Shown piece by piece: positions 3,201 through 29,542 of a stretch of 64,000 nucleotides of DNA. The stretch comes from Malacoraja senta (Eukaryota). The DNA is taken from NCBI GenBank assembly GCA_038087875.1, contig CM075998.1, forward strand, positions 1,488,001 through 1,552,000, read 5' to 3'. Under the pieces are notes generated by a model, which was not told the origin of the DNA, did not search any database, and was given only the letters and a program-made list of their open reading frames with translations. The translations under genes and the position numbers were made by a program. Each line of letters starts with the position of its first letter. The first letter of the stretch is position 1.

Positions 3201-6200
3201 CAGTGAGCTCCTGTCTTGCACTTTATAGACAGCGGAATGTGGTTTAGCGTGTCCGGAGGTGAGTCATTTGGTGCAGAATGCTCAGGCATTGGCTTGTCCT
3301 AGTTGACCATCACATTTGTGTATCTGGTCCAGTTGAGAGTTTGGCCAATGGCGACCAAAATGCTGATGGTGGGGACACTGTGATTATAGTACCTTTTGAA
3401 TGTCAGGGGTGGGTGGTTAGACTTCTTGTTGGAGACGGTCATTGCCTGGTACTTTTGTAGCACAAAAGGTACTTATCAACCTGTACCTGAATGTTGTCTA
3501 GGTCTTGTTTGTACAGGTGTGCACTGGCTCATTTTGCTGAGAAGCAAACTGAATATTGTGCACTCGGCAATTATCTCCACTTCTAGCCTAATGCTGGAAA
3601 GAAGATCATTGATGAAGCAGCTAGCAATTAATGGGCCCAAGGATTATTTGGAGAGTACTTACTATTTGATTGCTTGTGAATAAATCTGATTGAAGAAAAA
3701 AATATATGCTTAATATTTAGGCTTTATATTACTGCTTTCATCTGTCCTTTGTGATAACTAAATTCTGAATGATAGAATGCGCATATAATGTGTATAATGA
3801 CAGATAATTTAGCAATAAGAATGTGAAGTGATGTCCATTTATTTAGGTCTGGAAAAGTTACAGACATCTTAACACTATGAAATGCATTATTCCTTTTAAT
3901 AACTCTGGGGGGAAATGACTGCAAAGAAACTACATTGTAAAGAATACTTACTAAATAAATCTAGCTCTTTTGTATGTTTTGATTGTTGTACATTAATTAT
4001 TAAGAATTAATCTTTTTCAAGTATGTTGTCCCAATATTTCTTAATCTGATACTATATTGCAGGTATTAGCTCTAGTTTTTGTTAGAAAATTGATGGACCT
4101 TTGCTTTCTGAAGCGCGAGCTAAGCTGGCTCGATGATTTAATACCTGAAAGTAAGAAGAAAAAAATAGATGACGCCAAAAAAGTCAAGGAAGATGGGGTA
4201 AGATTCAATTGTCATAATGACTCTTTTTTTGTTTTGACAGACCAGTTTTAATCATTGTCTTTTGCTTTTAATCGTTGAAAGGGAAAATCCAATTGCATTT
4301 TTAAAAGTGGAATTTTCCTCTTTTCCAAAAGATTTGTGCACCTGAAGCTACTTTGATGTAAACATTATTTGATCACACCTGATGGGAACAACTTTCCAAT
4401 CTTCCCCAATCTTTTCAAATGACAATTTGAATTGGCCATAGGAACAGTCAAAATACTGGTTTGTTTTGAATTTCCCTCTTCCCCCCAGCTTTCAAAATGA
4501 ATGCACTTGAATTCAGTGCAAGGAATTAATTTTGAAGTTGCATTATCACAATGTAGAAGAGTGATTCAAAACTGATATTTCATCACTCCACCTACAAACC
4601 ATGACATGGAGTAAACTAACTCATGGGTCATTTTGCAATCTTATTTTGGTTTAAAGCAAGTGACTTCTTTAGAAGAGAAAGTCGTGTACAGAATTTGCAT
4701 TAAGATCTATCGTTTGGTGGAGATTGTTCAAGGGAGGGAGATGGAGAATATTTAACTTGTTGCAATTTAAACCACTTAATTTTATCTGGTTTTCATTATA
4801 TGATTACGTAATAATATATATATGTGTGTTACATAATCTTGTATCTAGTGCAGTTTTGTTATGGTACCTATTACCAATCGCAGATACACCATAGATATTG
4901 TCTCAGTTGTTCCCTTTAGCAGTCTGGGTATTCTGCATCCACCAATGCCCCATATTGCCCAATATTTAGTTATTTTATAGGACACAAAGTGCTGGAGTAA
5001 CTCAGCAGATCAGGCAGCACCTCTAGAGAACATGGATAGGTGACGTTTTGGGTCGAAACCCTTCTTCTGACTGACTTGAACACACAATTCAGGATGCAAC
5101 AATCGGACCCTTGTGATCTGAATTACTTAATTTACAATTTACACATGTTTCTCAATTTTACACATTATACAATTATCCCCTTGACTTGTTTGGTATGTGG
5201 CTGCGTATGTACTTGCCCAGATTTTTCAGTAGACAATGAAAACATTTTAGTAAGGAGAGGATTGGCTTGAATCATTGCACTGCTTTGTTTTAGTATTAAC
5301 AAGTGAGCATACAGAGAAATGGATGTTCACAAACCTTGCTTTCTCTGCTCAATTTCACTTCTCTCAAACATTAATGAAAATAAAAAGTGCCATTTAGGAT
5401 AATTTTCCTTGTTTGGCACCAACATTATTTTGGCCAACTTTGAGGTCTAAAAAGTGATGTTTCACACGTTAACTTGTAGTTCTATTGATCATTCTGTGTC
5501 TCTGTGGAATTTTTAAATATGCAAGATCAACTTGGTATTTCCAAGTGAGTCTGTGTATAATAGAATATGCAGTGCCAAATAGTGTGAAACTTAACCAGAA
5601 TAAACTTAATTTTCAGCCATTTCATAAAAAAGACCCTCTCATTGACTATCAGTATAACTGGCTTCCTACTGATTTGCTTTTGTGACAAGCTGTGGAAAAT
5701 ATTTCAGCAGATCAGTGCATCGTTTTGGATAGTTTTTTGATCTGGTACAGTGTTTTTATTTCTCCAACAGGAATCAGAGAAAATGTTGGATCCAGGGGAC
5801 AGTGGTGTGCAGCTGCCAATGGAAAGTAGCAAACTGCTTCAGAGTCCTGTAAAGAGTAATATTTATAGGTAATCCAGTCCATAGTGCTTCTAGTACTGTT
5901 TGCAATTACGTTTATGCAATTTTATCTGCCATTTGGATGTTTTAATGCTATTTTATGCATCACCATCTGCATTTTTACCCAAATGATAACAGACACCATA
6001 TTGATATCCTTAAAAATACCAACACTTGTACATCAATCAGGTTAAATGTTCCTTGTAAGTATCAGTCCAGTTTTTGAGTATTTCGTACTTGCTGTTCAGT
6101 TGTCGACCAGGTAAAATGATGCCACTGTTTTTCCAAATGCTATTGATAATATTCCTTCGAAGAACTAGAATTGATTCACTGGAGGTACACCAGCGTAAAT

Positions 6201-15231: not shown

Positions 15232-16132
15232 AGGGAGGTTTCACAGCAGTCGGATCACGACCCATGACCTGTACTGTTGCTACGCTACGCCAAATGGAGT
15301 ACACGCGATGAACTGCAGGTAAGCACTTACCATTGTTTCCAGCGTAGCGGGCCCGTTAAAACCCACCGAAATTGTCAATTTTTGAGCTGTAAATAATTAT
15401 GGAAATCGGGATAAGCGTGAGAGACATTTATCCTACTTCAGAATTCAAAATGTGAGGAGAAATTACGGTAGATAGAAGCGAGAGCTGAAGGGACAACAAC
15501 AGCCAGAGTGCTTGGCGAACATTGGCCGTTTGCTCACTGCATTTCATCAACTAAGGCATTATTTGTGTTTTTTCTTGATTCCTTTGGCATCTAAAAAGTT
15601 TCAGAAGTGATAAATCTGGCTGTAAAATTTTTAAATCGCCCATGGTTCTCAAGTGGGTTTTTACATACAAAAAGAAAACGCCTCTGAAGCAAAATTTACA
15701 ACCAGATTTATCACTTCTGAGACTTTTTAGATACCAAAGGAATCAAGCAAAAAAACAAATAATGCCTTACTGTTGATGAAATGCAGTGAGCAAACGCGAT
15801 AATTCCCGATATTTTCAATTCCGATATCTGCACGGCCAATGTTCGCCAAGCACTTTAGCTGTTGTTGTCCCTTCAGCTCTCGCTTCTCTTTACCTTCATT
15901 TCGCTTCACTTTTGGAATTCTAAAGTTGGGTACATGTCTCTCACACCTACCCCGACTTCCACAATCTTTTACAGCACAAAAATTCAACATTTTGGCGGTT
16001 TTTAACAGGTAGGAAAGTACGCGTTTCTTGCATTAATAACATATACCGGAAGTTACGGATGTCCTCCAGATGGATTGAGCGGCTCCGTGCGTCAAGCCCT
16101 TTGACCCGGTGACCTTACATGCAACCCCCCCT
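15232..16132. mobile_element. fold-back non-autonomous DNA transposon with two opposed THAP remnants (ISL2EU/Harbinger-like)
   Basis: Ends tAGGGAGGTTTCA...TGCAACCCCCCCTa; inverted arms ~15355-15630 and ~15690-16008; ORF 15727-15990(-) has the THAP pattern C-x4-C...FRIP...CSLHF. Confidence 0.7.
15727..15990 (-). pseudogene. transposase-derived THAP zinc-finger remnant
   Basis: MLNFCAVKDCGSR...FRIPKV...CLANIGRAD...YRVCSLHF; conserved Trp position reads Cys; no catalytic domain follows. Confidence 0.7.
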
Positions 16133-16221
16133 ATATCTATATTATCACATCTGCACATTTATTGCTTTGAACAATGTTAATGGAGGCTGATTGTCACATA
16201 AATAGCTGTACCAACAAATGG

Positions 16222-16630
16222 TTTAAGTTTAGTTTATTGTCATGTGTACTGAGGTACAATGAAAAACGTTTGTTGTGTGCTAACCAGGCAGTGGAAAGAC
16301 AATACATGATTACAATCGACCCAATAGTTGTACATATACATGATATTGGAATAAGTTTTTTTTAGTGCAAGGTAAAGCCAGTAAAGTCTGATCAAAGATG
16401 GGTCTCCAATGAGGTAGATGGGAGGTCTGACAGCTCTCTAGTTGGTGAGAGGATGGTTCAGTTGCCTGATAATAGCTGGGATGAAACTCTCCCTGAATCT
16501 GGAGGTGTGTGTTTTCACACTTCTGTACCTCTTGCCCGAGGGGAGGGGAGAAGAGGGAGTGATAGGATGCTGCTGGCCTTGCCGAGGCACCGTGAGGTGC
16601 ACATGGAGTAAATGGAAGGGAGGTTGGTTT
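16222..16630 (-). mobile_element. Rex1/Babar-type LINE 3' fragment
   Basis: Reverse-complement match to 2000-2424, including the gtttaagtttagtttattgtc tail. Confidence 0.75.
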
Positions 16631-17070
16631 GTGGGGCGGTTTCAGCAAAGAAGGGGGGAAGCTAGTCACGCGAGATGTGTCGTCGGCCCCGGCCCCGGCC
16701 CCAACCGCCCGCCTCGCGCTTGTTGGCGGTTTGACCCAAACGCGCGGCAACGGCTTCATTGTTTGGGCGGTGGAGCATGCGCCGATCAGCTTTCACCCGG
16801 GAGCAGGCAGGTAGGCGCGCGAGCGGTAACCGCGTGGCGTCAATGCTGTGCGTTCCCTCCCGCGACACAGGCACTCGCTCCGTTTGAAAATAAACTGGTA
16901 ACAATAGGTACGCAAGGACAATTTGTTTTCGACCCCTGCAATCCTGGTAGGGAGTAACCGTGCAGCGTCGAATACGTATTTTGACCAGAGGCGCGGAAAA
17001 TTTCCGATGTGGTGCCAGTGTTTAAAAAAAAAAGTGGAATCGGTTGAGTAACTGCAGGTCGGTTGGGTGC
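16630..17070 (+). promoter_or_regulatory. CpG island / promoter and first exon of the unrecognised gene
   Basis: Abrupt CpG-rich stretch in AT-rich DNA; GC boxes (ggggcgg, tgggcgg), gcatgcgc, tcacgcgaga; donor CAG|gtaggc at 16810/16811. Confidence 0.75.
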
Positions 17071-20000
17071 AAATTGGTGGAAAAAATTAGGGATATTAAA
17101 TCATCGTGTCAAAAGGTATCGATTAATCAGTGGGAATTAATTAAGGGAAGCTTGCGTCTGGTCAACTATTGGGATTGTGGAGCCCTGCATGAGGAGAGTC
17201 AACGTAGAGGGCTGAACTCTGGACACGGTTAAATATGAGTGTTAGTGTTCCAATCTAAAGATGCTAGCGTGTGTTGGGGAAACTGCAGGCTCCCCCTCAG
17301 AGTTTCAAGTAGTCATGGTCTTTGAACAGAAGGCGTCCCATGTGGGTGGGCCAACATTAACTAGCAATGTTACAACATTTTGAGATTTTAAAAATCAAGT
17401 CTGCAATTTATCCCATCAGATAAAGCATAAAAAGACGTTTAATTTGACACCTAATTCACTTTCATATCTTCAGTATTAAAAAAGTTATGGCCATTTTCAT
17501 ACTCTGAAATCAGCATATTGTCCCTATTTGCTTTTCCATTGACTTAACACAAAAGCTGTGATCGAGGACAGTCAAAAGCCCATAACTTTCTTAAAAATTA
17601 AGAGAACTGAATGAAATGTTCAGTTATTATAGATTGAAGCATTCTGAAACAAATATGAAACATCTTACTTGGATGACCTGAAATTAAAGCATATAATTAG
17701 TTAGTTAACCAATTGTAGTTAATTACAAAAGTGACCGTTGTGATGGAAATAGTAATAAACACTCAGACTGCCATGAAAATTCAAAAATGTGATATTCTCA
17801 AGATCAGAACTTTAATATTATTGTATTATATGCTGTGAGTCTGTAACAGATAGGTAAATAAATTACAATTTCTAGCAATAGACCAAGTCTTTATGGAGAA
17901 GATCAGTTGCTAGCTGGTACATTGGCATATCATAATCAGTAGCATCATCATACTCCTCAGATTGTAACTAATAAGCAACTCTTCCTCAACTTTTCAATTT
18001 TGGCATTGTAAACTACAAGTTTTTGCTCTTCAAACCACGCATGACATGCCTTTCTGCCCACTACTTTCCCATTAAGAATGTCCTGTAGATTCCATTTCTT
18101 AAGAAAAGGATAATTGTTTTAAATAGCCTAAGTATCCAAATAACAAACTAATCCCATTCACACAAGAATTCACAATATAACATGCTTTTTAAATCTCATT
18201 GTTATGAACATATGCCAGATGGAAGGAGTGTATAATGACAAGTGTATAATGCATGAGTCATGAATATTAAAGCAAATGGGATCCAAGGGAAGTTGGCTCT
18301 GTGAGAGAAGATAAAAGGAAATAATTAGTAAAAGTTTAGTGAATGGAGGGTTGTGTACAGTACTGGGTGGGCCCCTTTTCTTAAAATACATTAATGGCTT
18401 CGAAACAAATGGTTTGGTTAAGTTTACCAAAATTAGCAGTGGGGTTGACAAAAATAAATTTGTAGGCTACAGTGAGATATCTAAGAACTGGCTGTGTCAG
18501 TACAGAACTGGCAAATAAAAATCAATCTGGAGAAGTGTGGGTTTCAGGAGGGTGGATAAAACAAGGCAATGCACAATAATGGGTTAGATTGAGTCCAACA
18601 ACATCTAATTGTGAACGTTGCGGAGAGTTAATTGTGAATGTTGTAAAGAGTTATTTATTAAGCTTCTTAATAATGCAAGTGTGAGATTTCATGACCATGT
18701 TGAAGCATTTGGAACCATGTTCAGCCATGTGCTTCACCTTGGCGTTTTCCATGTATGGACCAAGAATGATGAGGTCAAAGGCCAAGTGGTTCAGGAGAAA
18801 CCCACATTGGGTGGACAAGGATTTGGTAAGTGCCACAAAAGTCTTCAGCTTAATTAATTCACTTTGTGTGATGTCAAGAATCAGCTGAGGGCATGGAATG
18901 CAGGAAATCGCACACCATTCTGGCTGTAGTACTCAAGATCTGCACACCAGATTTGTGGATCGAGCCAAGCTTTGAGTACAGAACTACACAGTTACAACAT
19001 TTAATTATAGAATCAGAATTATACAGCATGGAAACAGGGCCTTCGACACAACTTGTCCATGCTGACTAAGATGTCCCATTTGCTTGCGTTTGACTCCTAT
19101 CCCTCTTAACCTTTCTTGTCCATATACGTGTTTAAATGTCTTTTATAATTGTACCTGCCTCTACAGCTTATAATTGTACCTTCCTCTACAACTTATAATT
19201 GTACCTGCCTCTACAGCTTCCTCTGTCAGCGTGTTCCACATACTGCCATCTGTAAGAAAATATTGTTTCTTGGATCCCTTTTAAATCTTTCCCTCCTTAA
19301 ATCTATGCCCTCTAGTGTTAGATTCCTCTATACTGGGGAAAAGGACCATCCACCTTGTGATGTTATATACTTCTGTTTGGATACCCCTCAACCTCCCATG
19401 CTTCAGTGAAAACAGCTCCAGCATATGACTTATGCAGCCTTATCCCTCCAGGCCCAGGAGTGTGGTAAGACTTCCCCAAAGGTTCACAGATCTTTGAAGG
19501 TGACAGGTAAAAGTGTTAAAGTTGCTCAAGGCAGCATATGGAATCCTGGATTTTATCTATAAGCATAGACTGCAGGAGGTTCAGCTAAGCCTTTATAAAT
19601 AATTGGTCCTAGGTACCGGATTTTAGTATTATGTCAAAACATTCAGAGAGAATTTATTTGACTCAGTGCAAAACTGATTAAATGGAGAAACTGGAAAAGC
19701 AGAGTGTTCTCTTTAGAGGAAGTTAAGGATAAAGTTGAAAGCAATGTTCAATATCATTAAGGATTTTGATAAAAAATAAATTGGCCATAAATTAAGGATC
19801 ATTAGTGAAAGAACATGAGGTGAAATGAGAATATATTTTACCCAACAATTTGTTATGATCTGGAATATACTTTGTTAAAGTGTGAAGGATGCAGAACGAA
19901 TAATAATATGAAGACAAGAATTGGTTAATATTTGGATACCTCCTGTTGTTTGTTATTCTGATTGATAAAAGTTTGGACAATGCATTTAATGGACAACATT

Positions 20001-23000
20001 AAATAGAGTGAACAGAAGTGAAAGCAGAAATGTACCACTTTTATATTCAATTTACTGGATGTAGCCAAGGTTACAATTCCCATCTCAGATTGGTGTTATT
20101 TTTAAACTACTACAATCATGAGAACATAACATCACAGTAGCTTTGGCAGATAAGCGTATCTGCCAAAAGATCTGCTCTTGGCAGATACGCTTTGGCAGCG
20201 GAGGGAGTGAATGTTTAGGATGATGGATAGGGTGCCACTCAAGCAGTCTGCTTTGTCCTGGATGATGACAAGGTTCATGAGAGTCATTGGAACAGCTCAT
20301 TTCGGCAAGTGGAGTGTATTTGGAGTGTTAGGAAGCGAGTTACTCGGGCAGGATACCCAGTCTCTGCTCTGCTCTTGCAAGCACAGTATTTATGTGACTG
20401 TTCCAGTTAAGTACCTGATCGACAGTGATCTTGAGGATGTAGATTGTGCAGTCCCAATGTTAGCAATGCTGATGTTAAGGTTGGATAGTTTGACTGTCTT
20501 GTGTTGATGATGGTAATTGGCTGGCACTTTTTTGGCACAGTTATTTTCCACTCATCAGCACATGCCTTAATGTAGTCTAGATCTTGCTGCATGTAGATAT
20601 CGACTGCATCATTATCTGAGGAATCATCATGCAGTTGAGAACTGCAATCATCAGGAAACATCCCCACTTCTGATCTTATGATGGAAAGGAGTTTATTGGT
20701 GGTATAAATATGGCTGGGCCTAGCATACACTGCCCTGGGGAAATTCTGTGGTGATGACCTGGTGCTTCTTCTTCAACAACAACCCAATCATATTCTTTTG
20801 TGCCAGGCATGATATTGACTCTAGCCATTGGACTGTTTTTTCACTGTGACTTCACCACTATCAAGGCTTCTTGATGCTATTTCCAGTCAAATGCTGGCTT
20901 TTAAGGCCAGTAGGTTGTACCACACTTCTGCATTTTACTCTTTTTCATGTTTGGGCTAAGACTGCAATGAGGTCTGGAGCCAAATGGTTCTGGCTAAACC
21001 AAATGCCCTTCCTTTCACTTGAGGACTATCCATAATTTGTTCTTTGTTTTATCACTCCTTATCAGTTATTGACCCAATTTGCCACCCATCCCCTGAAATT
21101 CTCTCAGTAATCTCTTGTCTGTAACCTCTCAAGAACTTTTTGAAATATGAGCGCCATTTTCAATTCCTTTCATCATTCATATCCACCACTTTCTCATTAA
21201 GAAACATTAAAAATATTAATACAGGTTACAAATTGAAGATTTTTGGATGGGATCGATAGTTTTATGTTTAATATTCCAGTGTTTGAAATGGAACATAGAG
21301 CAAGTCATCAAACAACTTCTACCTATTACTCTCCATACAGTCGGCGGTGTGCATCTCTACTACCAGAATCACCCTTGCATCTGGTGCCCGAGATTGAAAG
21401 ATCTGGTCTTGAGTGGTTTGACATCTGGGTTTATGAAATGATGGAAGAAGGTAATTTTGAAAAAGCTGCTTAACATTACTCGTGTAAAGCTGACAATCTT
21501 ATGTAATACTGATTTCATTCTTCAGTTGGTAACAGGGACCAAGATGTGCCAGCCTCACCTTTCAGTGATACTTCTGAGAAAATGCTGAGTTCTCAGGATA
21601 CGGGTAAATTTTAATTCTCCCTGCCACAAATTAATGTATTAGTAACTAATTTACTCTCCTGAGCTGCATGACCCCCCCCTGTCCAAGAAAACTGGGTGAT
21701 AACTGGTTGGAATGATAGTTGTTTATGGTGACTTACTGTGTTGATTTCCTTTCCTAGAGGATAGCATATCTTTCACTGAAGCTTTACCAAATGTTTGGAG
21801 GAGCATTATCATACTGTATAAAATGTTAGTGTTTTTGTTATTTTACCTGTATAATCAGCCAGGCTCTTTGTAGTAAGCAATTCTGAAATGTTTTAATGTA
21901 GCTCACTATGGAGTGGAATTTTTGACGGGTTTTCTTAATCTCTCATTGTAATTGGAGTAGAAGATTATTGCAACTCCTGCAGAAAATATTGAAATAGCTA
22001 TTTACGCTGTTTCTCAGAGTTGCTGCCAATCTTGCACTAAAGCTTCTGCTGAAGATTAGAATGCTTGGGGAAATTCTGTGCCTATAAATTCAAACGCTTC
22101 AATAAAATATTTTGGTTATTAATACATTATTCTTGGAGACTGTATAATTATTAAACACGTTTAATTTAAGTAAGCTAAGCAAGCATATTGATCAATATTT
22201 ACATCATGCCAACAGATTTTACAGTACCGTCAACCCCAATTGATCTTAACCTGCAAGACATGATTTCTGCCACTGATCAAAGTTTGGATCAGAATCCATC
22301 ACCTCAGGGTAAAACAAAATTGATATTTTGACATTTTTCAGTTTTCAAAGCAAAAAAAGATAACTTGCGAAAATAAAAATGTCAGGATTTCACTTCATGG
22401 CATACTATTTTTTTCTTAAAGGAACATTCAAATTAGAGCATTCTGGAAATTAGTATACTGTAGTTTTGTTAACCCATTTATTGATTGTAAATCAAGGAAA
22501 ATTGTGTTTTACCTGTGCAAAATACCTGTCTGGTATTTGGATCGTGTAACACCACATTTAAGAATTGAGGCGGGAATAATTTGCCAAATTTGGCAAGGTT
22601 ACTCTGGGGCTCCTCCTGTTGTCTGATAGTGTCAACTGCCCGTGACTAAAACAGTATAAAATATTTCAGTAAGGTTGAGTAAATCTTATTCCATCCTCAC
22701 CACCTCTGGCAAGAGGTGGTGAGGAGAGACTTCCTCCTGGCGCCATGTAAGCTTTTTACAAAACCTTTTTGTTACTTGTGATGCCTCCCCCACTTATACT
22801 TAACACACTTTTTAAAATGTCCTTTAAACAGATATTTAGCCTCTGATATAATTACTTAAGGGGCACATGTTTTGGGCATTTTCCCCAAACAGTAGAAGGT
22901 CCTTCTGCAGAGGCAGAATGAATGCACGTTCCATTGATAAAATGGATACAAACTATTCCAAGTTATTATGTCCTAAAAATGTGCATACACTTAAATCCAT

Positions 23001-25893
23001 TTGCCTGTTTTGTGCGGTACAGTCTAGGTTAGATGCTTTTGAGGTGTGGGAAGAATCAGGAAATCTGAAGTCTGTCAATGAGAGGTATATAGAAAAGTGC
23101 TGGCAGTGAGAATAGAGTATGAATTGTCTCCATGAAATCTGCTTAACCAGCCTGGGAAGTAACCCTCAAGATGGGTCTGGTTAAAATTTAGGAATGCATA
23201 ATTTATTGTGACAAGTGATACTTGCATCTTGATCAGGTTTTGGAGTGAATTTGGCACTAATTCCCAAAAAATTATCTAAAAATAAAAAATGTAGAAAGTT
23301 GCTGTATCTGCTACTGAATCAAAAGCGATTAAAAGCAAATTAGACTAATGTGAGAGTAATTTGTAGGGCAGTGGAGAAGTGTCTGAAGAAGGGTCCTGAC
23401 TCGAAACGTCACCTATCCATGTTCTCCAGAGATACTGCCTGACCTGCTGAGTTACTCCAACACTTTGTCTATTTTTGTAGACCAGCATCTGCAGTGGTTG
23501 GGAAGTCATGTCACGGTTGTACAAGATGTTGGTATTGCCACAGTTGGAGTATTGTGTACATTTCTGGTTACTCTGAGAAGTAATACTACCCAGTGTGCTG
23601 CATTTAAGTCCAGCACTGATGTATCACAAACACAAATTGCAGAAAATGCTTAACTGGTCATGATACAAAGATAAATGAAGTTACTGTCTTGGATTAAATG
23701 TCCTATCATAAAACAGACCAGAAAAAACATTCCTCTCTGACGCTGAATATTTCTAGGATTTTCTGGTTTTATTTCAGAATTCTGAGATTCACACTATTTG
23801 TCTTTTGTTTTATGTGCTTTAGTCCCTGGAGTGAGGCTTGACCCAGAACCTACTGCCATTGAAGGAGAACTGGTGCCACTGAACAATTTAAAACAAAAGA
23901 GTAAGTGTGGTATCACAGAAGTAAACGTCGATAATTGTGGCTGCATTTGTGTTACTTTATTAAGATTATATATACATACAGCAAAACAATAAATGTACAT
24001 GCAGAATTATTCATCTCTTTCATTTTAAATTCACGTAATGTGATATACATAAGTGCCTGAATCACAATGTGCTATTATGCAATTATACTATAATTTGGCA
24101 ACATTTAACCATAAGAGTAGTAGTTTAATTTATGTTTGTCATGTTTGATAACTGATACATTCAACATATTCAGAAGAATAGCATCAAACCACATTCCTAT
24201 TGGAAGGAATCCTCTAATAATTGAAGATAAGAATTCAAATTACAAATGCATTTTATTTATTTTTCAACGTGTAGTAACGTCCTGTTACATTTTGTTTGAA
24301 ACATAAGGCAGAGGAGTAATAAGCAAGAACTATAATGAAACCATTAAATGGTATCATACCCAAACCAGAAAGAAGCTTGCCCTTTCAAAATTGTCTGAAG
24401 ACCAGCTTCTGTCTGGGGAAGTCATTATTTAGTAAGTTCAGCTCTAGCACACCCACCTTTTTTTTGTTCTTTTACAAAGCTTAGATGGGTGTAAACACTA
24501 AAATATTAAGATTAGTGGCCTTGGTTATTAAATAGTTTAAAATATTTTGTCTAAATGTGCTTACACTTGCATTGATCATTCTTGACATCAAATTTCATGG
24601 TGCAATTTTTGCAATAATTAACTAGTTTATTTCAGTGACATTGGTTGATGTACTCTGTTCTAAAGTGTCATTATTTTAACTGAGACAGGGATTTTGTTTT
24701 TCTAAACATAATGGATATTAATGTCTTTTTTCCCTGAAATTAAAACGGAGTTTAAAAAAGAGAAAAATCTGCTTGATCGTTTTGATATAATGTGGCTGAG
24801 GGGGAAGAGCTTAATTCTGACTTTCCATTTGCATACAATTTTACTATTTAGCATTCAGAAACAGCGCAATACCACCCCTTCCTGCCATGCAGACCTGTCA
24901 CCTGGAAGCATGGTAATTTCAGTCTGTAATTAGAAAGCATTGTAGCAACACCTTGTGGGAATACAAGGCAATTGCACCTCTGAACATTAAATAAGTACTT
25001 TGAATTTCAACTGATGTTTCATGGATGCATAATTACACCAATGGCTTTAACATACAATCTGAGATTTTGTATTCATGTTACAGAATTTCCAAATTGTTAA
25101 CCATTAAACCTCAATCCCTTTTTTTACAACTGGTTAAAAATGGACACGCAAAATGTCCTCAATTGGTGGAGGTAATTTATTTAATTAACTTTTTAAAAGG
25201 AGCTACATTGATAGCAATTTAAGTTGGGAGAGATAGCAACAGCTGATTCAATATTTTTTGTGAAGGTTTAGGGACCAATTTTGTGCTTCAGAGTATGGGC
25301 ACATGGGTTGTCCTTAACAAAATAATTAATGAATGGTGGATGAAGTGAATTGATTGATGGACTGAATGCTCATCTTTTCCTGATTTCATTTCATGTATTA
25401 TCCAGACGATTTAAGAACTAAAGCTGCCAATTGCACTGAAGCGTGTGGGTGTATTATAATTAGAATAGAGCTCAGGCTGCAGAGATCATAATGTGAAACA
25501 GGGCACATTTTTAAAAGCATATTATGACATTTTGATAATGTGAGATACGTTTTCAGTGCTGAAAACTTGTAGCATGGTTTAAGTGAGGTATCTAACCTAA
25601 CGTTAAAACATTGCACTGTGGAAATTTGTTAATGTTTATTTTCATTTTCATTTAGACTTGTTATATTTGTGAGCTGTAAGATGTGAATATACAGTACAAG
25701 GCATATGTTGTTCCTGACCAGTTGGTTAAACCATGGGAATAAGCTAGGGAAGTCATCAAGACAGTTATTTTCTGGTTATTCCCATTCTTGAGGACATTAA
25801 CTCAATCTTTCAACTCCAGTTTTAATTCATTTACAGCAAAGTGGTCTTTACAGGGACATGCCGTGGTTCCATCATTCACTGGAGGGACAGTAG
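16777..25893 (+). CDS. unrecognised multi-exon gene, ~231-aa Ser/Pro/acidic-rich protein
   Basis: Exons 16777-16810, 21280-21450, 21526-21603, 22216-22308, 23823-23900 (all phase-1 junctions), then 24308-24431, 24852-24912, 25837-25893; 696 nt, open throughout, all GT-AG. The last three exons are less certain. Confidence 0.6.
17362..18226 (+). mobile_element. truncated copy of the non-autonomous DNA element at 34719-35756
   Basis: Same left end tagcaatgttacaa and ~370 bp of high similarity; a different middle (~17730-18085); similarity resumes; right TIR absent. Confidence 0.75.
18390..21010. mobile_element. cluster of old CR1-type LINE fragments in both orientations (intron 1 of the unrecognised gene)
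   Basis: Degenerate RT C-terminal and 3'-tail motifs similar to the CR1 copies at 44.4 and 52.3 kb. Confidence 0.55.
19143..19217 (+). repeat. 25-bp tandem repeat x3
   Basis: ttataattgtacctgcctctacagc in three near-identical copies. Confidence 0.9.
21280..21450 (+). CDS. unrecognised gene exon 2 (171 nt; alternative start gaaATGG at 21288)
   Basis: ttccag|TGTTTGAAATG...GAAGAAG|gtaatt; VFEMEHRASHQ...LEWFDIWVYEMMEE. Confidence 0.65.
21526..21603 (+). CDS. unrecognised gene exon 3 (78 nt)
   Basis: cttcag|TTGGT...ACGG|gtaaat after a 75-nt intron; VGNRDQDVPASPFSDTSEKMLSSQDT. Confidence 0.65.
22216..22308 (+). CDS. unrecognised gene exon 4 (93 nt)
   Basis: caacag|ATTTT...CAGG|gtaaaa; DFTVPSTPIDLNLQDMISATDQSLDQNPSPQ. 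Confidence 0.6.
23381..23495 (+). mobile_element. Penelope-type short repeat with intact minimal hammerhead core
   Basis: CTGAAGA-a-GGGTC-ct-GACTC-GAAA-CGTC at 23383-23410. Confidence 0.7.
23823..23900 (+). CDS. unrecognised gene exon 5 (78 nt)
   Basis: ctttag|TCCCT...AAGA|gtaagt; VPGVRLDPEPTAIEGELVPLNNLKQK. Confidence 0.65.
24308..24431 (+). CDS. unrecognised gene putative exon 6 (124 nt, phase 1-2)
   Basis: cataag|GCAGA...ATTTA|gtaagt; SRGVISKNYNETIKWYHTQTRKKLALSKLSEDQLLSGEVII; weak AAG acceptor. Confidence 0.45.
24852..24912 (+). CDS. unrecognised gene putative exon 7 (61 nt)
   Basis: atttag|CATT...CATG|gtaatt; YIQKQRNTTPSCHADLSPGSM. Confidence 0.5.
25837..25893 (+). CDS. unrecognised gene putative last coding exon
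   Basis: ttacag|CAAAGT...CAGTAG; QSGLYRDMPWFHHSLEGQ*. Confidence 0.4.
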   Translation, partial: QSGLYRDMPWFHHSLEGQ

Positions 25894-26044
25894 CTTGCAG
25901 ACTTTAAAGAGGAATATCAATCAAAATATTTTCATTGTCAAAATGTTCACTCCTGCCCAAATATATTTTAACAATTACCAAGCATGAGACAGGAAAAAAC
26001 TGAAAACAGAGGAAGAGAGATGAGCGTCTCAATTATCAATTTTG

Positions 26045-26430
26045 ATAATTGTACCTTGAAATGACAGTTGTCTTGCCTGTTTACCCTGAATTTATTCTAT
26101 ATATATTTTTTAATTGTACCTTAAAATAACACATTTTACCTGCTTGTCACTTAATTTACACTGAAAATCTGTGATAATCATACCTTAAAATGACACCAAA
26201 TCCTTGCTTGTTTACGCTTGTCATATTGAAAATATTTTATATTACACCTACTTGTAACATGATACCTGTTCCTTGCTGGTTTACTCTAATTAGAAAGAAG
26301 TATCCTTTACACAGGAAATGTTGGATAATTTTTTGATAATTATACCTTGAAATGACACAATTTCCTTGCTTTACCCTTAATTTATACTGTTTTTTTTTTT
26401 AAATTATACCTTACAGTAACACTTTACCTG
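26045..26430. repeat. degenerate ~64-bp tandem repeat, about 6 units
   Basis: Core taattgtaccttgaaatgaca variants at 26045, 26111, 26174, ~26239, 26336, 26401. Confidence 0.8.
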
Positions 26431-26519
26431 ATTGAATCGGGTATAAAAAAAATAACATTGTAGTGTCTATGACATACAGACTCTTGAATGCAATGCGAGT
26501 GTTGTGTTTGTGTACATAA

Positions 26520-26780
26520 CTCTGCTCCCCGCCCCAACCCCCGGTACAGTAGGCCTAGGGGACAGAGGAAAACCGCTACACTACATGTGCGGAGCTGACC
26601 GCTAGCCGTAGAGATGCACATGCAAAGACAGTCGGCCCGCACCCGTTTACACGCTTTCGCTAAAATCGACTCCGAGGATTTCCATGCACTCAACCATCGG
26701 CGCAGCGGCTCACTGTCTTTTATTGCAGAGATTTAGACTTTTTTTAAACCGAATTTCAAAGTGCGCGGAGAAATCTCATG
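26520..26780. promoter_or_regulatory. small CpG-rich island of unknown function
   Basis: Dense CpGs and GC box ccccgcccc at ~26527 in AT-rich surroundings; no ORF or repeat recognised. Confidence 0.45.
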
Positions 26781-28019
26781 CCTGAATTACTGAGTCCCCC
26801 TTTTTTACTGGAATACTTCAACTGGTATTCTAGAAGAGCTAACCAGAAAAAGGCTCTCAAATTGCCCTGATTAAAAAAAGGGGCAATGGTCTTTTTCACC
26901 CCACAATTAAGTGTCCAGGCGCACCAACACTGAAAAATTAAGAGTGGACGAGAGTGGTCTGGAATTTGAGAAAAGGCTGGTTGGTTAAAGGTATAAAGAT
27001 ATTCCAGTTGCTGGCTATCCTTATGCATCAGTGGCTGTCTGTTGCCTAATTTTTAGGACAGGGGTTGGTTTGGGCTAATTTTCCAGACAACATCTAGCAT
27101 TCTAACCACCACTCGAGTAATTGGAGACTTTCAAATTAGCAGCTGGGAGTTTTGAATGCCTGCCTCAAACCTGGCGTAAGCCCATTCAATACGTTAGAAT
27201 GTGAGAGGAAAAGTGAACACCATCCAGTTTTTGATCCTTAAGCTTGCCAAAGAATAGATATTTACCAGACCCATTTGGAATGGTATTCCGTGTTCCTGTT
27301 TCCACAATAAAATGGCCACTGCTTGGTTGTGTTTGCGGCTTCCTTTTTCCTCTCTCCATTCTGTCCACAGAACTTTTGAGCATTTGAGCTTGCTGAGATT
27401 TTGGGAAGGAGAGTATAGATAAGTGGCATGAGACAGCTAAATGGAATTGACAGCTCACTGGTACTTCACCTGGTATGGGACCCAGTGTATGATCTGGTGA
27501 GTCCCAGTACTTGGCTTCAGGCATATTTCCAATAAATTACTGATTTTGTCAGGTTAATAACATAGTAATGTTAAATAAACCCATCAAAGAATACTTTCAC
27601 TTCTCTTAATAATTTGATCCAGTAAAGAATCTTTGATCTGAAACATTATCTCTTTTTTCACAGATGCTGCCTGACCAGCTGAGGGTTTCCAATGTTTTCA
27701 GTTTTTAATTGCTGATTTCCAGTGGCTCCACAGCTTTGCTTGTTAGTATATTGTTCTTTTACTTACTGACTTGTTAAAATCTTTGAACACTTTTTAATTG
27801 ATGTTGAAATTGATCCAAACTGCAGTGGGTAGGATGGGTTACAGTGTACTTTTGCCCAGTCAGTAGCTGCATTACCAGTGCTGTTATATTGATGTCTCCC
27901 CAGAACCCCCCCCCCCCCTTCCAGGCTACATAAATAAAGAGTAGGCTTTTTGTAACTACTCGTTTCCAACAATTCTTTTGATTTCAGCATATGAAAATTT
28001 TGATAATTAAAGGGTCCTT

Positions 28020-28780
28020 ATTCTCTTGATATACCTGTAGAATCTCTTAGAATGTACCTTGATCTTGTCTGTCAGAGCTTGCACTTTCTCTTTTTGCCAT
28101 CATGATTTCACCCCCTAACTCTATACTCTTATAATCCTGACATTCCGTAAGGGATATGTTTGATTCCAGCTGCCTATACCAAAATATATCTCCATTTTGG
28201 TGATGAGCGCCTCAATATCCCTTATCAACCAGGGCTCCTTAAACCAGCCAGCCTTGCCTTTTACTCCACGAGAAACATGCTGTCCCTGAACTCTCTCCAT
28301 CTCACCTTTAAAAGCTTCCCACTGGCCAGACATCTCTTTACTTGTGAACAGTATCTCTCAATCAAACTCTGCAAGTTCCTGTCTCATACCTTCAAAACCT
28401 GTTTTTTTTTCCCCATGACTATTTTAAAGTTAATAGGTTTATGATCACTGGTCCAAAAATGGCACTTCAGTCACCTGCCGTCTTGTTCCCGAGTTGTTCC
28501 TAAATTGTCCCCTCACAAATAGGGGGGTCTGTATTGTTTTTTTTTTAACTTTCCTGGAAACACAATTCCACATATCCGGCGGGAGTCTTCCAATGAAATA
28601 AATGCAGTTTTGACCTCCTTGCTTTTCCTCTCTACTAAATTTATCCACATTAACATCTATATCAGGCTGTATTTGTTCATCTGCCACATTATTGCTTTGG
28701 GTCTCTCCTCCCTGCCAGACTAGTTTACATGTTCCCAAGTAGCACTAGCACATCTCCCCGCCAGGATAATGATGGGTCTA
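28020..28780 (-). mobile_element. old CR1-type LINE fragments
   Basis: Remnant peptide WEAFKGEMERVQGQHV...EPWLIRDIEALI typical of the CR1 ORF2 linker. Confidence 0.65.
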
Positions 28781-29520
28781 ATGTTCAGATTTAATCTGTG
28801 ATGAAACTCTTTTTGAACAATGCTTGTATTATATCTTATGGAGTTTAAAAATAGAATTTTGTCTTACATTTCATGCGATGGAGGTTGTCATTTTAGATTA
28901 TCTTAATTTTTTTTTAAGTCTTGTCGACAAAACTGCATTCCACTACTTGTTTATCAAGAATTGCACAATTTAGATCCATAATGAAGCTACCACGTTAGTT
29001 CTGCCTCACTCCCACATGCATGTTTCATCTGCACCAGTCACCCATTTCTCACACCAGCTATCCTTCTGGTGAGCCTGCCCATTCTCCATTAAATGGCAAG
29101 CAGTTTTGTAATCCTTAGGAGAAAAAAACCCTTAGCAGGATCTCCCATATAGGATGTTATTGTTCACTTCCATCCCACAGGATCTGAGAGGAAAATAAAC
29201 AGTTTCCAAGAGACTAACACAACCAAGTGCCCTTAGAATTGACCTTATGCAATATAAAATGCTGAAACAAAATAACAGTTTTCAAACGAGAATTATAGTA
29301 AACAGAATGAGCAGTGACTTACTTAATACTCCGATTATAGTCTTTGGAATTTCTTTGTGAATTAAAGCTAAAACATGAACAATGAATATAAAAACCATTT
29401 AAAAAATTTGAACATAATACTTAAAGCGGCACAAAATACTTCAGTGGAAGCAAAACAATTTAAAAATAGTTGGTCATAAACCAAACTGAACGATGGGCTT
29501 ATTAAGGCAACAGTATCATA

Positions 29521-29542
29521 TTATTCTTCCTTCAAATCGAAC
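29521..29542 (-). CDS. ESYT1: ESYT1 exon 31, coding part with stop
   Basis: ttgcag|G TTC GAT TTG AAG GAA GAA TAA. Confidence 0.88.

What the first reader, a model, noticed from the sequence alone, without database searches (positions are those of the whole stretch)
16777..25893. Hidden multi-exon gene of no recognisable family between SLC4A8 and ESYT1
Seen: an ATG in the CpG island (16777) reads MRRSAFTREQA to a phase-1 donor, and four symmetric phase-1 exons (171, 78, 93, 78 nt) continue the frame without stops. Three more exons (124, 61, 57 nt) close a 696-nt CDS: MRRSAFTREQAVFEMEHRASHQTTSTYYSPYSRRCASLLPESPLHLVPEIERSGLEWFDIWVYEMMEEVGNRDQDVPASPFSDTSEKMLSSQDTDFTVPSTPIDLNLQDMISATDQSLDQNPSPQVPGVRLDPEPTAIEGELVPLNNLKQKSRGVISKNYNETIKWYHTQTRKKLALSKLSEDQLLSGEVIIYIQKQRNTTPSCHADLSPGSMQSGLYRDMPWFHHSLEGQ. 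The ORF track shows only pieces of it. I do not recognise the protein. Inference: largely disordered, with one aromatic/acidic helix (LEWFDIWVYEMMEE), several SP/TP sites and an S-T-P motif of the Polo-box docking type, as in fast-evolving cell-cycle or meiotic adaptors. The 3' model is ambiguous: skipping exon 6 gives a different open C-terminus.
Basis: partly seen in the sequence, partly recalled or inferred. Interest (0 to 1): 0.8.

Follow-up and report, generated by a model that had tools for sequence, protein, structure and literature searches.

The report
Conserved orphan gene, ends mis-modelled

Summary
The spliced ORF is in the sequence exactly as described (8 exons, all AG/GT, 696 nt).

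**Exons 2-5 are real** (21280-21450, 21526-21603, 22216-22308, 23823-23900).
- They match NCBI gene models called "uncharacterized protein" in the skates Rhinoraja and Amblyraja, the ray Narcine, and the sharks Cetorhinus and Chiloscyllium. A profile search also finds coelacanth and sturgeon.
- Lengths, phases and splice sites are kept. dN/dS is 0.45-0.58.
- Rays and the basking shark keep ESYT1 downstream, and Rhinoraja also keeps the SLC4 gene upstream.

**Exon 1 and exons 6-8 are not supported.**
- The exon 1 donor is missing in Rhinoraja.
- Exons 6 and 7 carry frameshifts and lost donors there. Exon 8 lies in sequence Rhinoraja lacks.
- All 40 shuffled copies of the downstream DNA allowed a similar ORF completion.
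- Exons 6-8 lie antisense inside what looks like the 5.6-kb ESYT1 3'UTR.

**Likely product:** start ATG at 21288, giving 140 aa (exon 5 spliced to 27664) or 167 aa (read-through).

**Family and function:** no Pfam, PDB, Atlas or literature match. AlphaFold predicts disorder. Three short motifs are invariant. The polo-box serine is not conserved. Function is unknown; a motif-bearing, phospho-regulated adaptor is my guess.

The parts
16560..16900 (.). Small CpG island, the likely promoter region of the gene.
   Evidence: GC 0.625 and CpG o/e 1.04, against 0.34 for the whole window. The coding start of Rhinoraja isoform X2 maps inside it.
16603..16622 (+). End of the homology-inferred non-coding 5' exon. 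The donor GT is at 16623-16624. The 5' limit (TSS) is unknown.
   Evidence: This aligns to the first exon of the Rhinoraja X2 model, whose donor GGAG|GT is kept. In the window the X2 start reads ATG GAG TAA, so it is UTR or a 2-codon uORF here.
16777..16810 (+). Not supported.
   Evidence: The ATG is kept in Rhinoraja, but an indel follows it and the GTAGGC donor is absent. No annotated relative carries this N-terminus.
21280..21450 (+). Exon 2, holding the conserved start codon (ATG at 21288, context GAAATGG). It encodes motif 1, SPLxxVPxxExSGLEWFD, at about 21369-21422.
   Evidence: It is 171 nt with AG/GT borders in Rhinoraja and Chiloscyllium too. dN/dS against shark is 0.38 in this frame, against 1.06 and 1.54 in the other two frames. 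phmmer gives E 1.9e-27 and 1.0e-18. Shark, coelacanth and sturgeon models, and Rhinoraja X1, start at this Met.
21526..21603 (+). Exon 3 (78 nt, phase 1-1). It encodes motif 2, N..(Q/R)(D/G)VPxS.
   Evidence: Same length and borders in Rhinoraja and in the shark.
22216..22308 (+). Exon 4 (93 nt, phase 1-1). It encodes motif 3, FxVPxTP, at 22218-22238.
   Evidence: It is 93 nt in Rhinoraja and 96 nt in the shark, with borders kept. F, V, P, T and P are invariant in 11 relatives.
23823..23900 (+). Exon 5 (78 nt), with donor GTAAGT at 23901.
   Evidence: Identical length and borders in Rhinoraja. It is present in the Narcine and Amblyraja models. Sharks, coelacanth and sturgeon have a divergent counterpart, (I/A)Q(I/V)VP followed by a Lys-rich tail.
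23901..23993 (+). Possible read-through end of exon 5, giving a 167-aa product. The stop TAA is at 23990-23992 and overlaps an AATAAA at 23988-23993.
   Evidence: The Amblyraja model XP_032871455.1 ends this way. Sequence read; product length.
27664..27674 (+). Alternative terminal coding exon, AT GCT GCC TGA, giving ...KQK-NAA-stop and a 140-aa product. It is derived from a repeat.
   Evidence: This is the terminal exon of Rhinoraja isoforms X1-X3, and the acceptor and the 11 nt are identical in the window. The motif GATGCTGCCTGACC occurs 11 times in the window at up to 2 mismatches.
24308..24431 (+). Not supported.
   Evidence: Rhinoraja has a net +1 nt (frameshift) and the donor is GC instead of GT. 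There is no counterpart in the shark. Both substitutions seen in relatives' contigs are nonsynonymous.
24852..24912 (+). Not supported.
   Evidence: Rhinoraja has +4 nt (frameshift) and the donor is AT instead of GT.
25837..25893 (+). Not supported.
   Evidence: It lies in window 25422-27580, which has no counterpart in the Rhinoraja locus.
23941..29520 (-). The poly(A) signal AATAAA on the minus strand is at 23961-23956.
Evidence: All end 0-20 nt past the minus-strand AATAAA. A 6858-nt contig continues to the right of 26800. The ESYT1 stop codon is at 29521-29523 on the minus strand.
21870..22040 (.). Conserved non-coding block in intron 3.
   Evidence: About 69% identical to the shark locus, where the rest of the intron does not align, and it contains stops in all frames.

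Best explanation
Window 16.6-27.7 kb (+ strand) holds a real, conserved protein-coding gene. It is the orthologue of NCBI's 'uncharacterized protein' LOC144611996 (Rhinoraja) and LOC116968755 (Amblyraja).

**Gene structure.** Translation starts at the ATG in exon 2 (21288), after a non-coding 5' exon in the CpG island. The product is about 140 aa if exon 5 splices to a repeat-derived terminal exon at 27664, or about 167 aa if exon 5 is read through to the stop at 23990.

**Unsupported exons.** Exons 6-8 sit antisense in the long 3'UTR of the convergent ESYT1 gene.

**Family.** It has no described domain. It is found so far in skates, rays, sharks, coelacanth and sturgeons, so it is at least as old as jawed bony and cartilaginous fishes.

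**How it probably works (inferred, not shown).** The protein is intrinsically disordered, and its only invariant parts are three short linear motifs:
- SPLxxVPxxExSGLEWFD
- (Q/R)(D/G)VPxS
- FxVPxTP

Two of them contain Ser/Thr-Pro sites. The most likely mode of action is a small docking or adaptor protein. Its motifs would bind folded partner domains, and proline-directed kinases would regulate the binding. The partners are unknown.
For: **Sequence and model.** All eight exons, their borders and the translation were checked.

**Homologues.**
- Exon 2 alone finds only two representatives among 1.8 billion proteins, a skate and a shark protein (E 1.9e-27 and 1.0e-18).
- The clusters hold Rhinoraja X1/X2, Amblyraja and a Logan ORF.
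- Further searches add Rhinoraja X3, Narcine and Cetorhinus.
- A profile search adds Latimeria (E about 1e-19) and Acipenser (E about 2e-11).

**Conservation against Rhinoraja.**
- Exons 2-5 have the same lengths, AG/GT borders and no indel.
- They differ at 13 of 420 nt (3.1%). Well-aligned intron and upstream DNA differs at 6.2%, with 17 gap events in 1251 nt.
- Fisher p = 0.017. The chance of no gap in 420 nt is about 0.003.
- dN/dS is 0.45.

**Conservation against shark.**
- Exons 2-4 keep their borders and phase, with 66% aa identity and dN/dS 0.58.
- Exon 2 gives 0.38 in frame, against 1.06 and 1.54 out of frame.
- A relative's DNA runs (organism E) hold 0.77 of the exon-2 words but only 0.33 of the words of the 4.7-kb stretch.

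**Synteny.**
- Rhinoraja: SLC4-like (+), X (+), ESYT-like of 1118 aa (-).
- Narcine and Cetorhinus: ESYT-like downstream.
- Sturgeon: next to CSRNP- and CP2-domain genes.

**Against exons 1 and 6-8:**

**Antisense transcript:**

**Disorder:** AF2 mean pLDDT 53.9 and pTM 0.13.

**Invariant motifs:**
Against: - I saw no spliced RNA from this species or any other. The only read-laying run showed no contigs on exons 2-5 in four RNA-like runs of relatives. Organism B's RNA-like runs hold next to none of the exon-2 words, organism A's are not among its listed holders, and one small RNA-like run of another species holds 0.47.
- Support for splicing is therefore indirect: Gnomon multi-isoform models in several species and conserved splice sites.
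- dN/dS of 0.45-0.58, and 0.88 for exons 3-4 against shark, is only weak purifying selection on few sites.
- The 5' exon and both 3' ends are taken from other species' models, which disagree with each other.
- The functional reading rests on motif conservation and predicted disorder alone. No partner is known.
- The minus strand of the 23.9-26.3 kb transcript is inferred from the poly(A) signal and contig ends, not from stranded reads.
Confidence: 0.85

Rival explanations
1. The reader's full 8-exon, 231-aa model is the true product in this species. Exon 1 gives the start, and exons 6-8 give a lineage-specific C-terminus.
For: All borders are canonical and the frame is open. The ATG at 16777 is conserved in Rhinoraja.
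Against: - In Rhinoraja exon 6 has +1 nt and a GC donor, exon 7 has +4 nt and an AT donor, exon 8 has no counterpart, and the exon 1 donor is missing.
- No relative's protein has these ends.
- RNA-like contigs run unspliced through the supposed introns 6 and 7 and end at a minus-strand poly(A) site.
- 40 of 40 shuffles allow such a completion.
- 4 of 5 substitutions in relatives are nonsynonymous.
Confidence: 0.04
2. The locus is transcribed but not translated. It would be a conserved lncRNA or a decaying gene, and the annotated proteins would be artefacts of automatic prediction.
For: - dN/dS is not far below 1 for exons 3-4 (0.88).
- Intron 2 and a block of intron 3 are also conserved, which suggests constraint at the nucleotide level.
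- There is no domain, and predicted structure confidence is low.
- The models disagree at both ends.
Against: - The same frame stays open with phase-1 exon borders from skates to sharks. A profile of the peptide then recovers coelacanth and sturgeon proteins at E of about 1e-19 and 2e-11, with invariant residues clustered in three motifs.
- Exon 2 shows dN/dS of 0.38 only in the proposed frame.
- Indels between shark and skate come in multiples of three (93 against 96 nt).
Confidence: 0.06
3. The gene is a strongly diverged orthologue of a named tetrapod or teleost gene of the 12q13-like neighbourhood that my searches could not reach. In that case it is not an orphan. This is compatible with the structural conclusions above.
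For: - The profile searches were limited to proteins of about 110-400 aa that share 5-residue words.
- The exhaustive search used a single 56-aa exon and did not even find coelacanth or sturgeon.
- One sub-threshold Pfam hit to TIMELESS_C was seen (P0021 51-90, E 0.0063, 17.2 bits against a cut-off of 23.8).
Against: - No named protein appeared at E up to 10 in the profile searches.
- NCBI assigns no orthology-based name in eight species.
- The TIMELESS_C hit occurs in 1 of 11 members, and no Timeless chain is found in the PDB by profile or single sequence.
- The literature search was empty.
Confidence: 0.15

Closest known systems
NCBI Gnomon models 'uncharacterized protein' LOC144611996 (Rhinoraja longicauda, XP_078287523.1 and isoforms) and LOC116968755 (Amblyraja radiata, XP_032871455.1)
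   Same: Orthologues. Exons 2-5 match with 131 of 139 residues identical to the Rhinoraja product, with the same exon lengths and splice sites. Rhinoraja has the same neighbours, an SLC4-like gene upstream and ESYT-like convergent downstream.
   Different: Rhinoraja starts in exon 2 or in a CpG-island exon that is closed by a stop in the window, and ends in a 3-codon repeat-derived exon. Amblyraja uses another upstream exon and reads through the exon 5 donor.
Uncharacterised homologues in Narcine bancroftii (XP_069761017.1), Cetorhinus maximus (LOC144672641), Chiloscyllium punctatum (GCC19050.1), Latimeria chalumnae (LOC106701857) and Acipenser ruthenus (LOC131720871)
   Same: They have the same three invariant motifs in the same order, a similar size (123-229 aa) and a comparable exon layout in the sturgeon. 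ESYT lies downstream in the ray and the basking shark. The sturgeon neighbours are a CSRNP-domain and a CP2-domain gene; from my own knowledge, human CSRNP2 and TFCP2 lie near SLC4A8 on 12q13.
   Different: Identity to the bony-fish members is only about 30-40%. The C-terminal parts diverge: a Lys-rich tail in sharks, coelacanth and sturgeon, against a short tail in skates. None has a known function.
Small disordered docking proteins regulated by proline-directed phosphorylation, such as polo-box or Cks docking substrates. This is an analogy from general knowledge, not a family.
   Same: Small size, predicted disorder, conservation confined to short motifs, and invariant T-P and S-P sites.
   Different: No sequence relationship to any such protein was found. 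The Ser of the S-T-P core needed for polo-box docking is Leu in the basking shark. Binding was not tested.

Membership tests
Uncharacterised LOC116968755 / LOC144611996 family (elasmobranchs, coelacanth, sturgeon) | Significant sequence similarity over the core (exons 2-4/5). | tested here: met
   phmmer of exon 2 gives E 1.9e-27 and 1.0e-18. tblastn of the relatives hits window exons 2-5.
Uncharacterised LOC116968755 / LOC144611996 family (elasmobranchs, coelacanth, sturgeon) | Three invariant motifs in order: SPLxxVPxxExSGLEWFD, then (Q/R)(D/G)VPxS, then FxVPxTP. | tested here: met
   All three are present in the window's exons 2, 3 and 4. Invariant columns are listed.
Uncharacterised LOC116968755 / LOC144611996 family (elasmobranchs, coelacanth, sturgeon) | Same exon structure (phase-1 symmetric exons) and conserved splice sites. 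| tested here: met
   Exons are 171/78/93/78 nt in Rhinoraja and 171/78/96 nt in Chiloscyllium, with AG/GT borders kept.
Uncharacterised LOC116968755 / LOC144611996 family (elasmobranchs, coelacanth, sturgeon) | Conserved position next to ESYT1, in convergent orientation. | tested here: met
   Seen in Rhinoraja, Narcine and Cetorhinus. In the window, ESYT C2 and SMP ORFs lie on the minus strand and the ESYT1 stop is at 29521-29523.
Polo-box (PBD) docking adaptors | A conserved S-[pS/pT]-P core; the Ser at -1 is required (general knowledge). | tested here: not met
   T-P is invariant, but the preceding Ser is Leu in both Cetorhinus isoforms (PLTP).
Polo-box (PBD) docking adaptors | Phospho-dependent binding to a polo-box domain. 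| not testable with these tools
   No vertebrate PLK sequence is available to the complex tool, and no experiment is possible.
Timeless PAB domain (Pfam PF05029 TIMELESS_C) | A score above the Pfam gathering threshold. | tested here: not met
   The best score is 17.2 bits against a cut-off of 23.8, in 1 of 11 members. No Timeless chain is found in PDB searches.
Any Pfam-A family | A hit at E up to 1 to any model, for exon peptides or full-length relatives. | tested here: not met
LC3-interacting (LIR) or FFAT-like motif carriers (lead from memory for E-W-F-D-[IVC]) | A core [WFY]-x-x-[LIV] (LIR) or E-[FY]-[FY]-D-A-x-E (FFAT), conserved in all members. | tested here: inconclusive
   W-F-D is invariant, but the fourth residue is Cys in coelacanth, and position 2 is Trp rather than Phe or Tyr. 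Binding was not tested.

The most novel reading that the evidence does not exclude
This is an ancient orphan gene, predating the split of cartilaginous and bony fishes. It encodes a roughly 140-aa disordered protein with three invariant docking motifs. It survives only in slowly evolving lineages (elasmobranchs, coelacanth, sturgeons) and was lost, or diverged beyond recognition, in teleosts and tetrapods. Its 3' end overlaps the ESYT1 3'UTR tail-to-tail, which could couple the two genes' expression.
Probability: 0.35. Interest if true: 0.5.

Novelty: new member of a known kind. Interest (0 to 1): 0.35.

Why it matters
- **For annotation.** The 231-aa peptide should not be propagated.
- **For biology.** It is a member of a small, entirely uncharacterised gene family with no Pfam entry and no paper. 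Cartilaginous fishes, coelacanth and sturgeon share it, and it was not found in teleost or tetrapod proteomes in my searches. Its three invariant short motifs give direct handles for finding partners.
- **As a caution.** Chaining open AG..GT segments in AT-rich vertebrate DNA always succeeds. Here it added four unsupported exons to four real ones.

Tried and rejected
- **Pfam** on the five exon peptides and on 11 full-length relatives gave nothing above threshold. The single TIMELESS_C hit (17.2 bits against a cut-off of 23.8) is rejected, because PDB searches with the profile and with that protein find no Timeless chain.
- **ESM Atlas** search by features gave no usable hit.
- **PDB** profile and single-sequence searches gave only insignificant matches: cytochrome c2 (E 0.054) and the ABC ATPase signature region (E 0.15).
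- **Literature** searches for the LOC identifiers and for the motif strings found 0 papers.
- **RNA evidence.**
  - The runs ranked by the 4.7-kb stretch held about 13% of its words. I first took this for the exon share.
  - Laying them showed instead a contiguous block, 23941 to about 26250, at roughly 96% identity, and nothing on exons 2-5.
- **Locus look-ups** for the coelacanth proteins failed because they are not on record.
- **Not run.** Fold search was skipped because the model is low-confidence (pLDDT 54). Complex prediction was skipped because no partner is proposed.
- **Motif readings from memory** (polo-box, LIR, FFAT, PP2A-B56 L..V.E): none is fully conserved across the family. I keep them as leads only.


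Full report
**1. Observation**

- The ATG is at 16777. Exon 1 runs 16777-16810 and is followed by GTAGGC.
- The other exons are 21280-21450, 21526-21603, 22216-22308, 23823-23900, 24308-24431, 24852-24912 and 25837-25893.
- The ATG sits in a small CpG island. Region 16560-16900 has GC 0.625 and CpG o/e 1.04, against 0.34 for the window.

**2. Surroundings**

- SLC4-type C-terminal exons lie on the + strand (ORFs at 3-272 and 4057-4251; weak Pfam HCO3_cotransp hit, E 7e-4, below the cut-off).
- By alignment to the Rhinoraja locus, the SLC4 CDS ends near 10.8 kb.
- ESYT-type C2 and SMP exons lie on the minus strand at 43672-43929 and 55795-56046.
- The ESYT1 stop codon is at 29521-29523, where the protein ends ...FCRFDLKEE.
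- The gene therefore lies downstream of SLC4A8 and is convergent with ESYT1.

**3. Exons 2-5 are real**

A full HMMER scan of 1.8 billion representative proteins with the 56-aa exon 2 peptide gave only two hits:
- a 140-aa protein, 96% identical;
- a 131-aa protein, 75% identical.

These are XP_078287523.1, "uncharacterized protein LOC144611996 isoform X1" of the skate Rhinoraja longicauda, and GCC19050.1, a hypothetical protein of the shark Chiloscyllium punctatum. The skate cluster also holds LOC116968755 of Amblyraja radiata.

In the Rhinoraja genomic locus (L001):
- The four exons have the same lengths (171, 78, 93, 78 nt), AG/GT borders and no indel.
- They show 13 differences in 420 nt (3.1%). 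Well-aligned intron and upstream DNA shows 6.2%, with 17 gap events in 1251 nt.
- Fisher p = 0.017. The chance of no gap in 420 nt is about 0.003.
- Nei-Gojobori dN/dS is 0.45.

In the shark locus (L002):
- Only exon 2 with intron 2 and exon 3, exon 4, and one intronic block align at all.
- Exons 2-4 keep their borders and phase (171, 78, 96 nt). Amino-acid identity is 66% and dN/dS is 0.58.
- For exon 2, dN/dS is 0.38 in the proposed frame, against 1.06 and 1.54 in the other two frames.

The genome runs of one relative (organism E) hold 0.77 of the sampled words of exon 2, but 0.33 of the words of the 4.7-kb stretch around it.

**4. The family is wider than elasmobranchs**

- A search with the Rhinoraja protein adds Narcine bancroftii and Cetorhinus maximus.
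- A profile of five members then finds Latimeria chalumnae LOC106701857 (E about 1e-19) and Acipenser ruthenus LOC131720871 (E about 2e-11). A further round adds only another sturgeon.
- Every member is named "uncharacterized" or "hypothetical".
- Synteny supports orthology:
  - Rhinoraja has SLC4-like, X and ESYT-like.
  - Narcine and Cetorhinus have ESYT-like downstream and convergent.
  - In the sturgeon the gene lies beside CSRNP- and CP2-domain genes and an AAA gene. From my own knowledge, human CSRNP2 and TFCP2 lie close to SLC4A8 on 12q13.
- The alignment shows three invariant patches: SPLxxVPxxExSGLEWFD, (Q/R)(D/G)VPxS and FxVPxTP.
- In five of the seven species with full-length models, at least one model begins at the Met in exon 2 (window 21288, context GAAATGG).

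**5. Exon 1 is not supported**

- The ATG at 16777 is kept in Rhinoraja. An indel follows it, and the GTAGGC donor is absent.
- Rhinoraja isoform X2 starts about 170 nt upstream, in an exon whose donor (GGAG|GT) is conserved in the window at 16622|16623.
- There the window reads ATG GAG TAA, so this exon is non-coding here.
- The Amblyraja model uses yet another upstream exon, at about window 18729-18824.
- The three N-termini disagree. What is conserved is the start in exon 2.

**6. Exons 6-8 are not supported**

- In Rhinoraja, exon 6 has a net +1 nt and a GC donor. Exon 7 has +4 nt and an AT donor. Exon 8 lies in window 25422-27580, which has no counterpart.
- No relative has this C-terminus.
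- All 40 dinucleotide shuffles of 23901-26000 allowed a comparable AG/GT completion.

RNA-like contigs of three related species, about 96% identical to the window, add to this:
- They cover 23936/23941/23955 to about 26250 contiguously, straight through the supposed introns. None lies on exons 2-5.
- All end just downstream of a minus-strand AATAAA (TTTATT at 23956-23961 on the + strand).
- A 6858-nt contig continues to the right of 26800. That length fits an ESYT1 mRNA of about 3.35 kb CDS plus UTRs (my arithmetic).
- I read this as the 5.6-kb 3'UTR of ESYT1 on the minus strand. The strand is inferred, not shown.

**7. Likely 3' ends**

- Rhinoraja splices exon 5 to a 3-codon terminal exon, AT GCT GCC TGA.
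  - Its acceptor and sequence are identical in the window at 27664, giving a 140-aa product.
  - The exon is part of a repeat whose core occurs 11 times in the window.
- Amblyraja reads through the exon 5 donor to a stop that in the window is at 23990-23992, inside an AATAAA. This gives 167 aa.
- In sharks, coelacanth and sturgeon, the exon 5 counterpart encodes (I/A)Q(I/V)VP plus a Lys-rich tail.

**8. What the protein is**

- No Pfam family is found for exon peptides or for 11 relatives. The one exception is a sub-threshold TIMELESS_C hit in one member, which PDB searches do not back.
- There is no Atlas hit and no paper.
- AlphaFold2 with the 11-sequence alignment gives mean pLDDT 53.9 and pTM 0.13, with two short helices only and none at LEWFD.
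- It is therefore a disordered protein whose conservation is confined to short motifs.
T-P is invariant, but the preceding Ser is Leu in the basking shark.
- My best guess is a motif-bearing adaptor regulated by proline-directed phosphorylation. This is inferred and untested, and I would put it at roughly one in four that it is right in that form.

**9. Verdict**

Only the middle four of its eight exons stand.
- The gene is already modelled, unnamed, in related species. In this genome it is therefore a new member of an annotated but uncharacterised family.
- The earlier-findings look-up returned only this same finding and an unrelated ribozyme note.

Noticed in passing
window 15727-15990 (-): An 87-aa ORF starting with Met encodes a THAP zinc-finger domain (Pfam THAP, E 3.5e-5, 24.9 bits against a cut-off of 23.9), just upstream of the CpG island. 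Window 15232-16192 has no counterpart in the Rhinoraja locus, so this is probably a lineage-specific transposon-derived insertion.
   Followed up: partly
window 23941-29520 (-): ESYT1 appears to have a 3'UTR of about 5.6 kb, ending at a minus-strand AATAAA (23961-23956). It would overlap tail-to-tail with the 3' end(s) of the orphan gene. In Cetorhinus the two genes' CDS ranges also overlap.
   Followed up: partly
window 21451-21525 and about 21870-22040: The 75-nt intron 2 is nearly invariant against Rhinoraja (1 of 75 differences) and aligns to the shark. A 170-nt block of intron 3 is about 69% identical to the shark although it is full of stops. These are possible splicing or enhancer elements.
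   Followed up: partly
window 23381-23470 and 27663 (also 920, 1502, 5008, 37356, 42647, 45929, 46020, 57938, 58373): A high-copy repeat with core GATGCTGCCTGACC. It reaches contig depths of tens of thousands in relatives' runs. One copy supplies the terminal coding exon of the Rhinoraja models.
   Followed up: partly
window 25422-27580: About 2.1 kb present in the window, and at least up to about 26250 in relatives' transcripts, has no counterpart in the Rhinoraja locus. This is an indel inside the presumed ESYT1 3'UTR.
   Followed up: no
L002 15656-15752 (Chiloscyllium punctatum): The deposited shark model GCC19050.1 reads its last exon in the wrong frame. In the phase-1 frame the same exon encodes a peptide 69% identical to the C-terminal exon of the Cetorhinus protein.
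   Followed up: yes
P0021 residues 103-139 (Cetorhinus); L002 15657-15752: The shark exon 5 peptide (…PLLDKKPSKISTGKQQKV…) resembles the region around the ABC-ATPase signature motif (…PLLERKPSDLSGGQRQRV…). The E-value of 0.15 against the PDB is not significant, so this is probably chance. Skates lack this sequence.
   Followed up: no
window 59705-60679 (-) and 52581-53690 (-): There is an intact-looking 324-aa Tc1/mariner-type transposase ORF (Pfam HTH_Tnp_Tc3_2 E 7e-23, DDE_3 E 4e-13). There is also a 369-aa ORF that looks like a LINE reverse transcriptase (not tested). Both lie inside ESYT1 introns.
   Followed up: partly
window 16603-16611 (+): The position that is the start codon of Rhinoraja isoform X2 reads ATG GAG TAA in the window. 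If this exon is the 5'UTR, it is a 2-codon upstream ORF.
   Followed up: no
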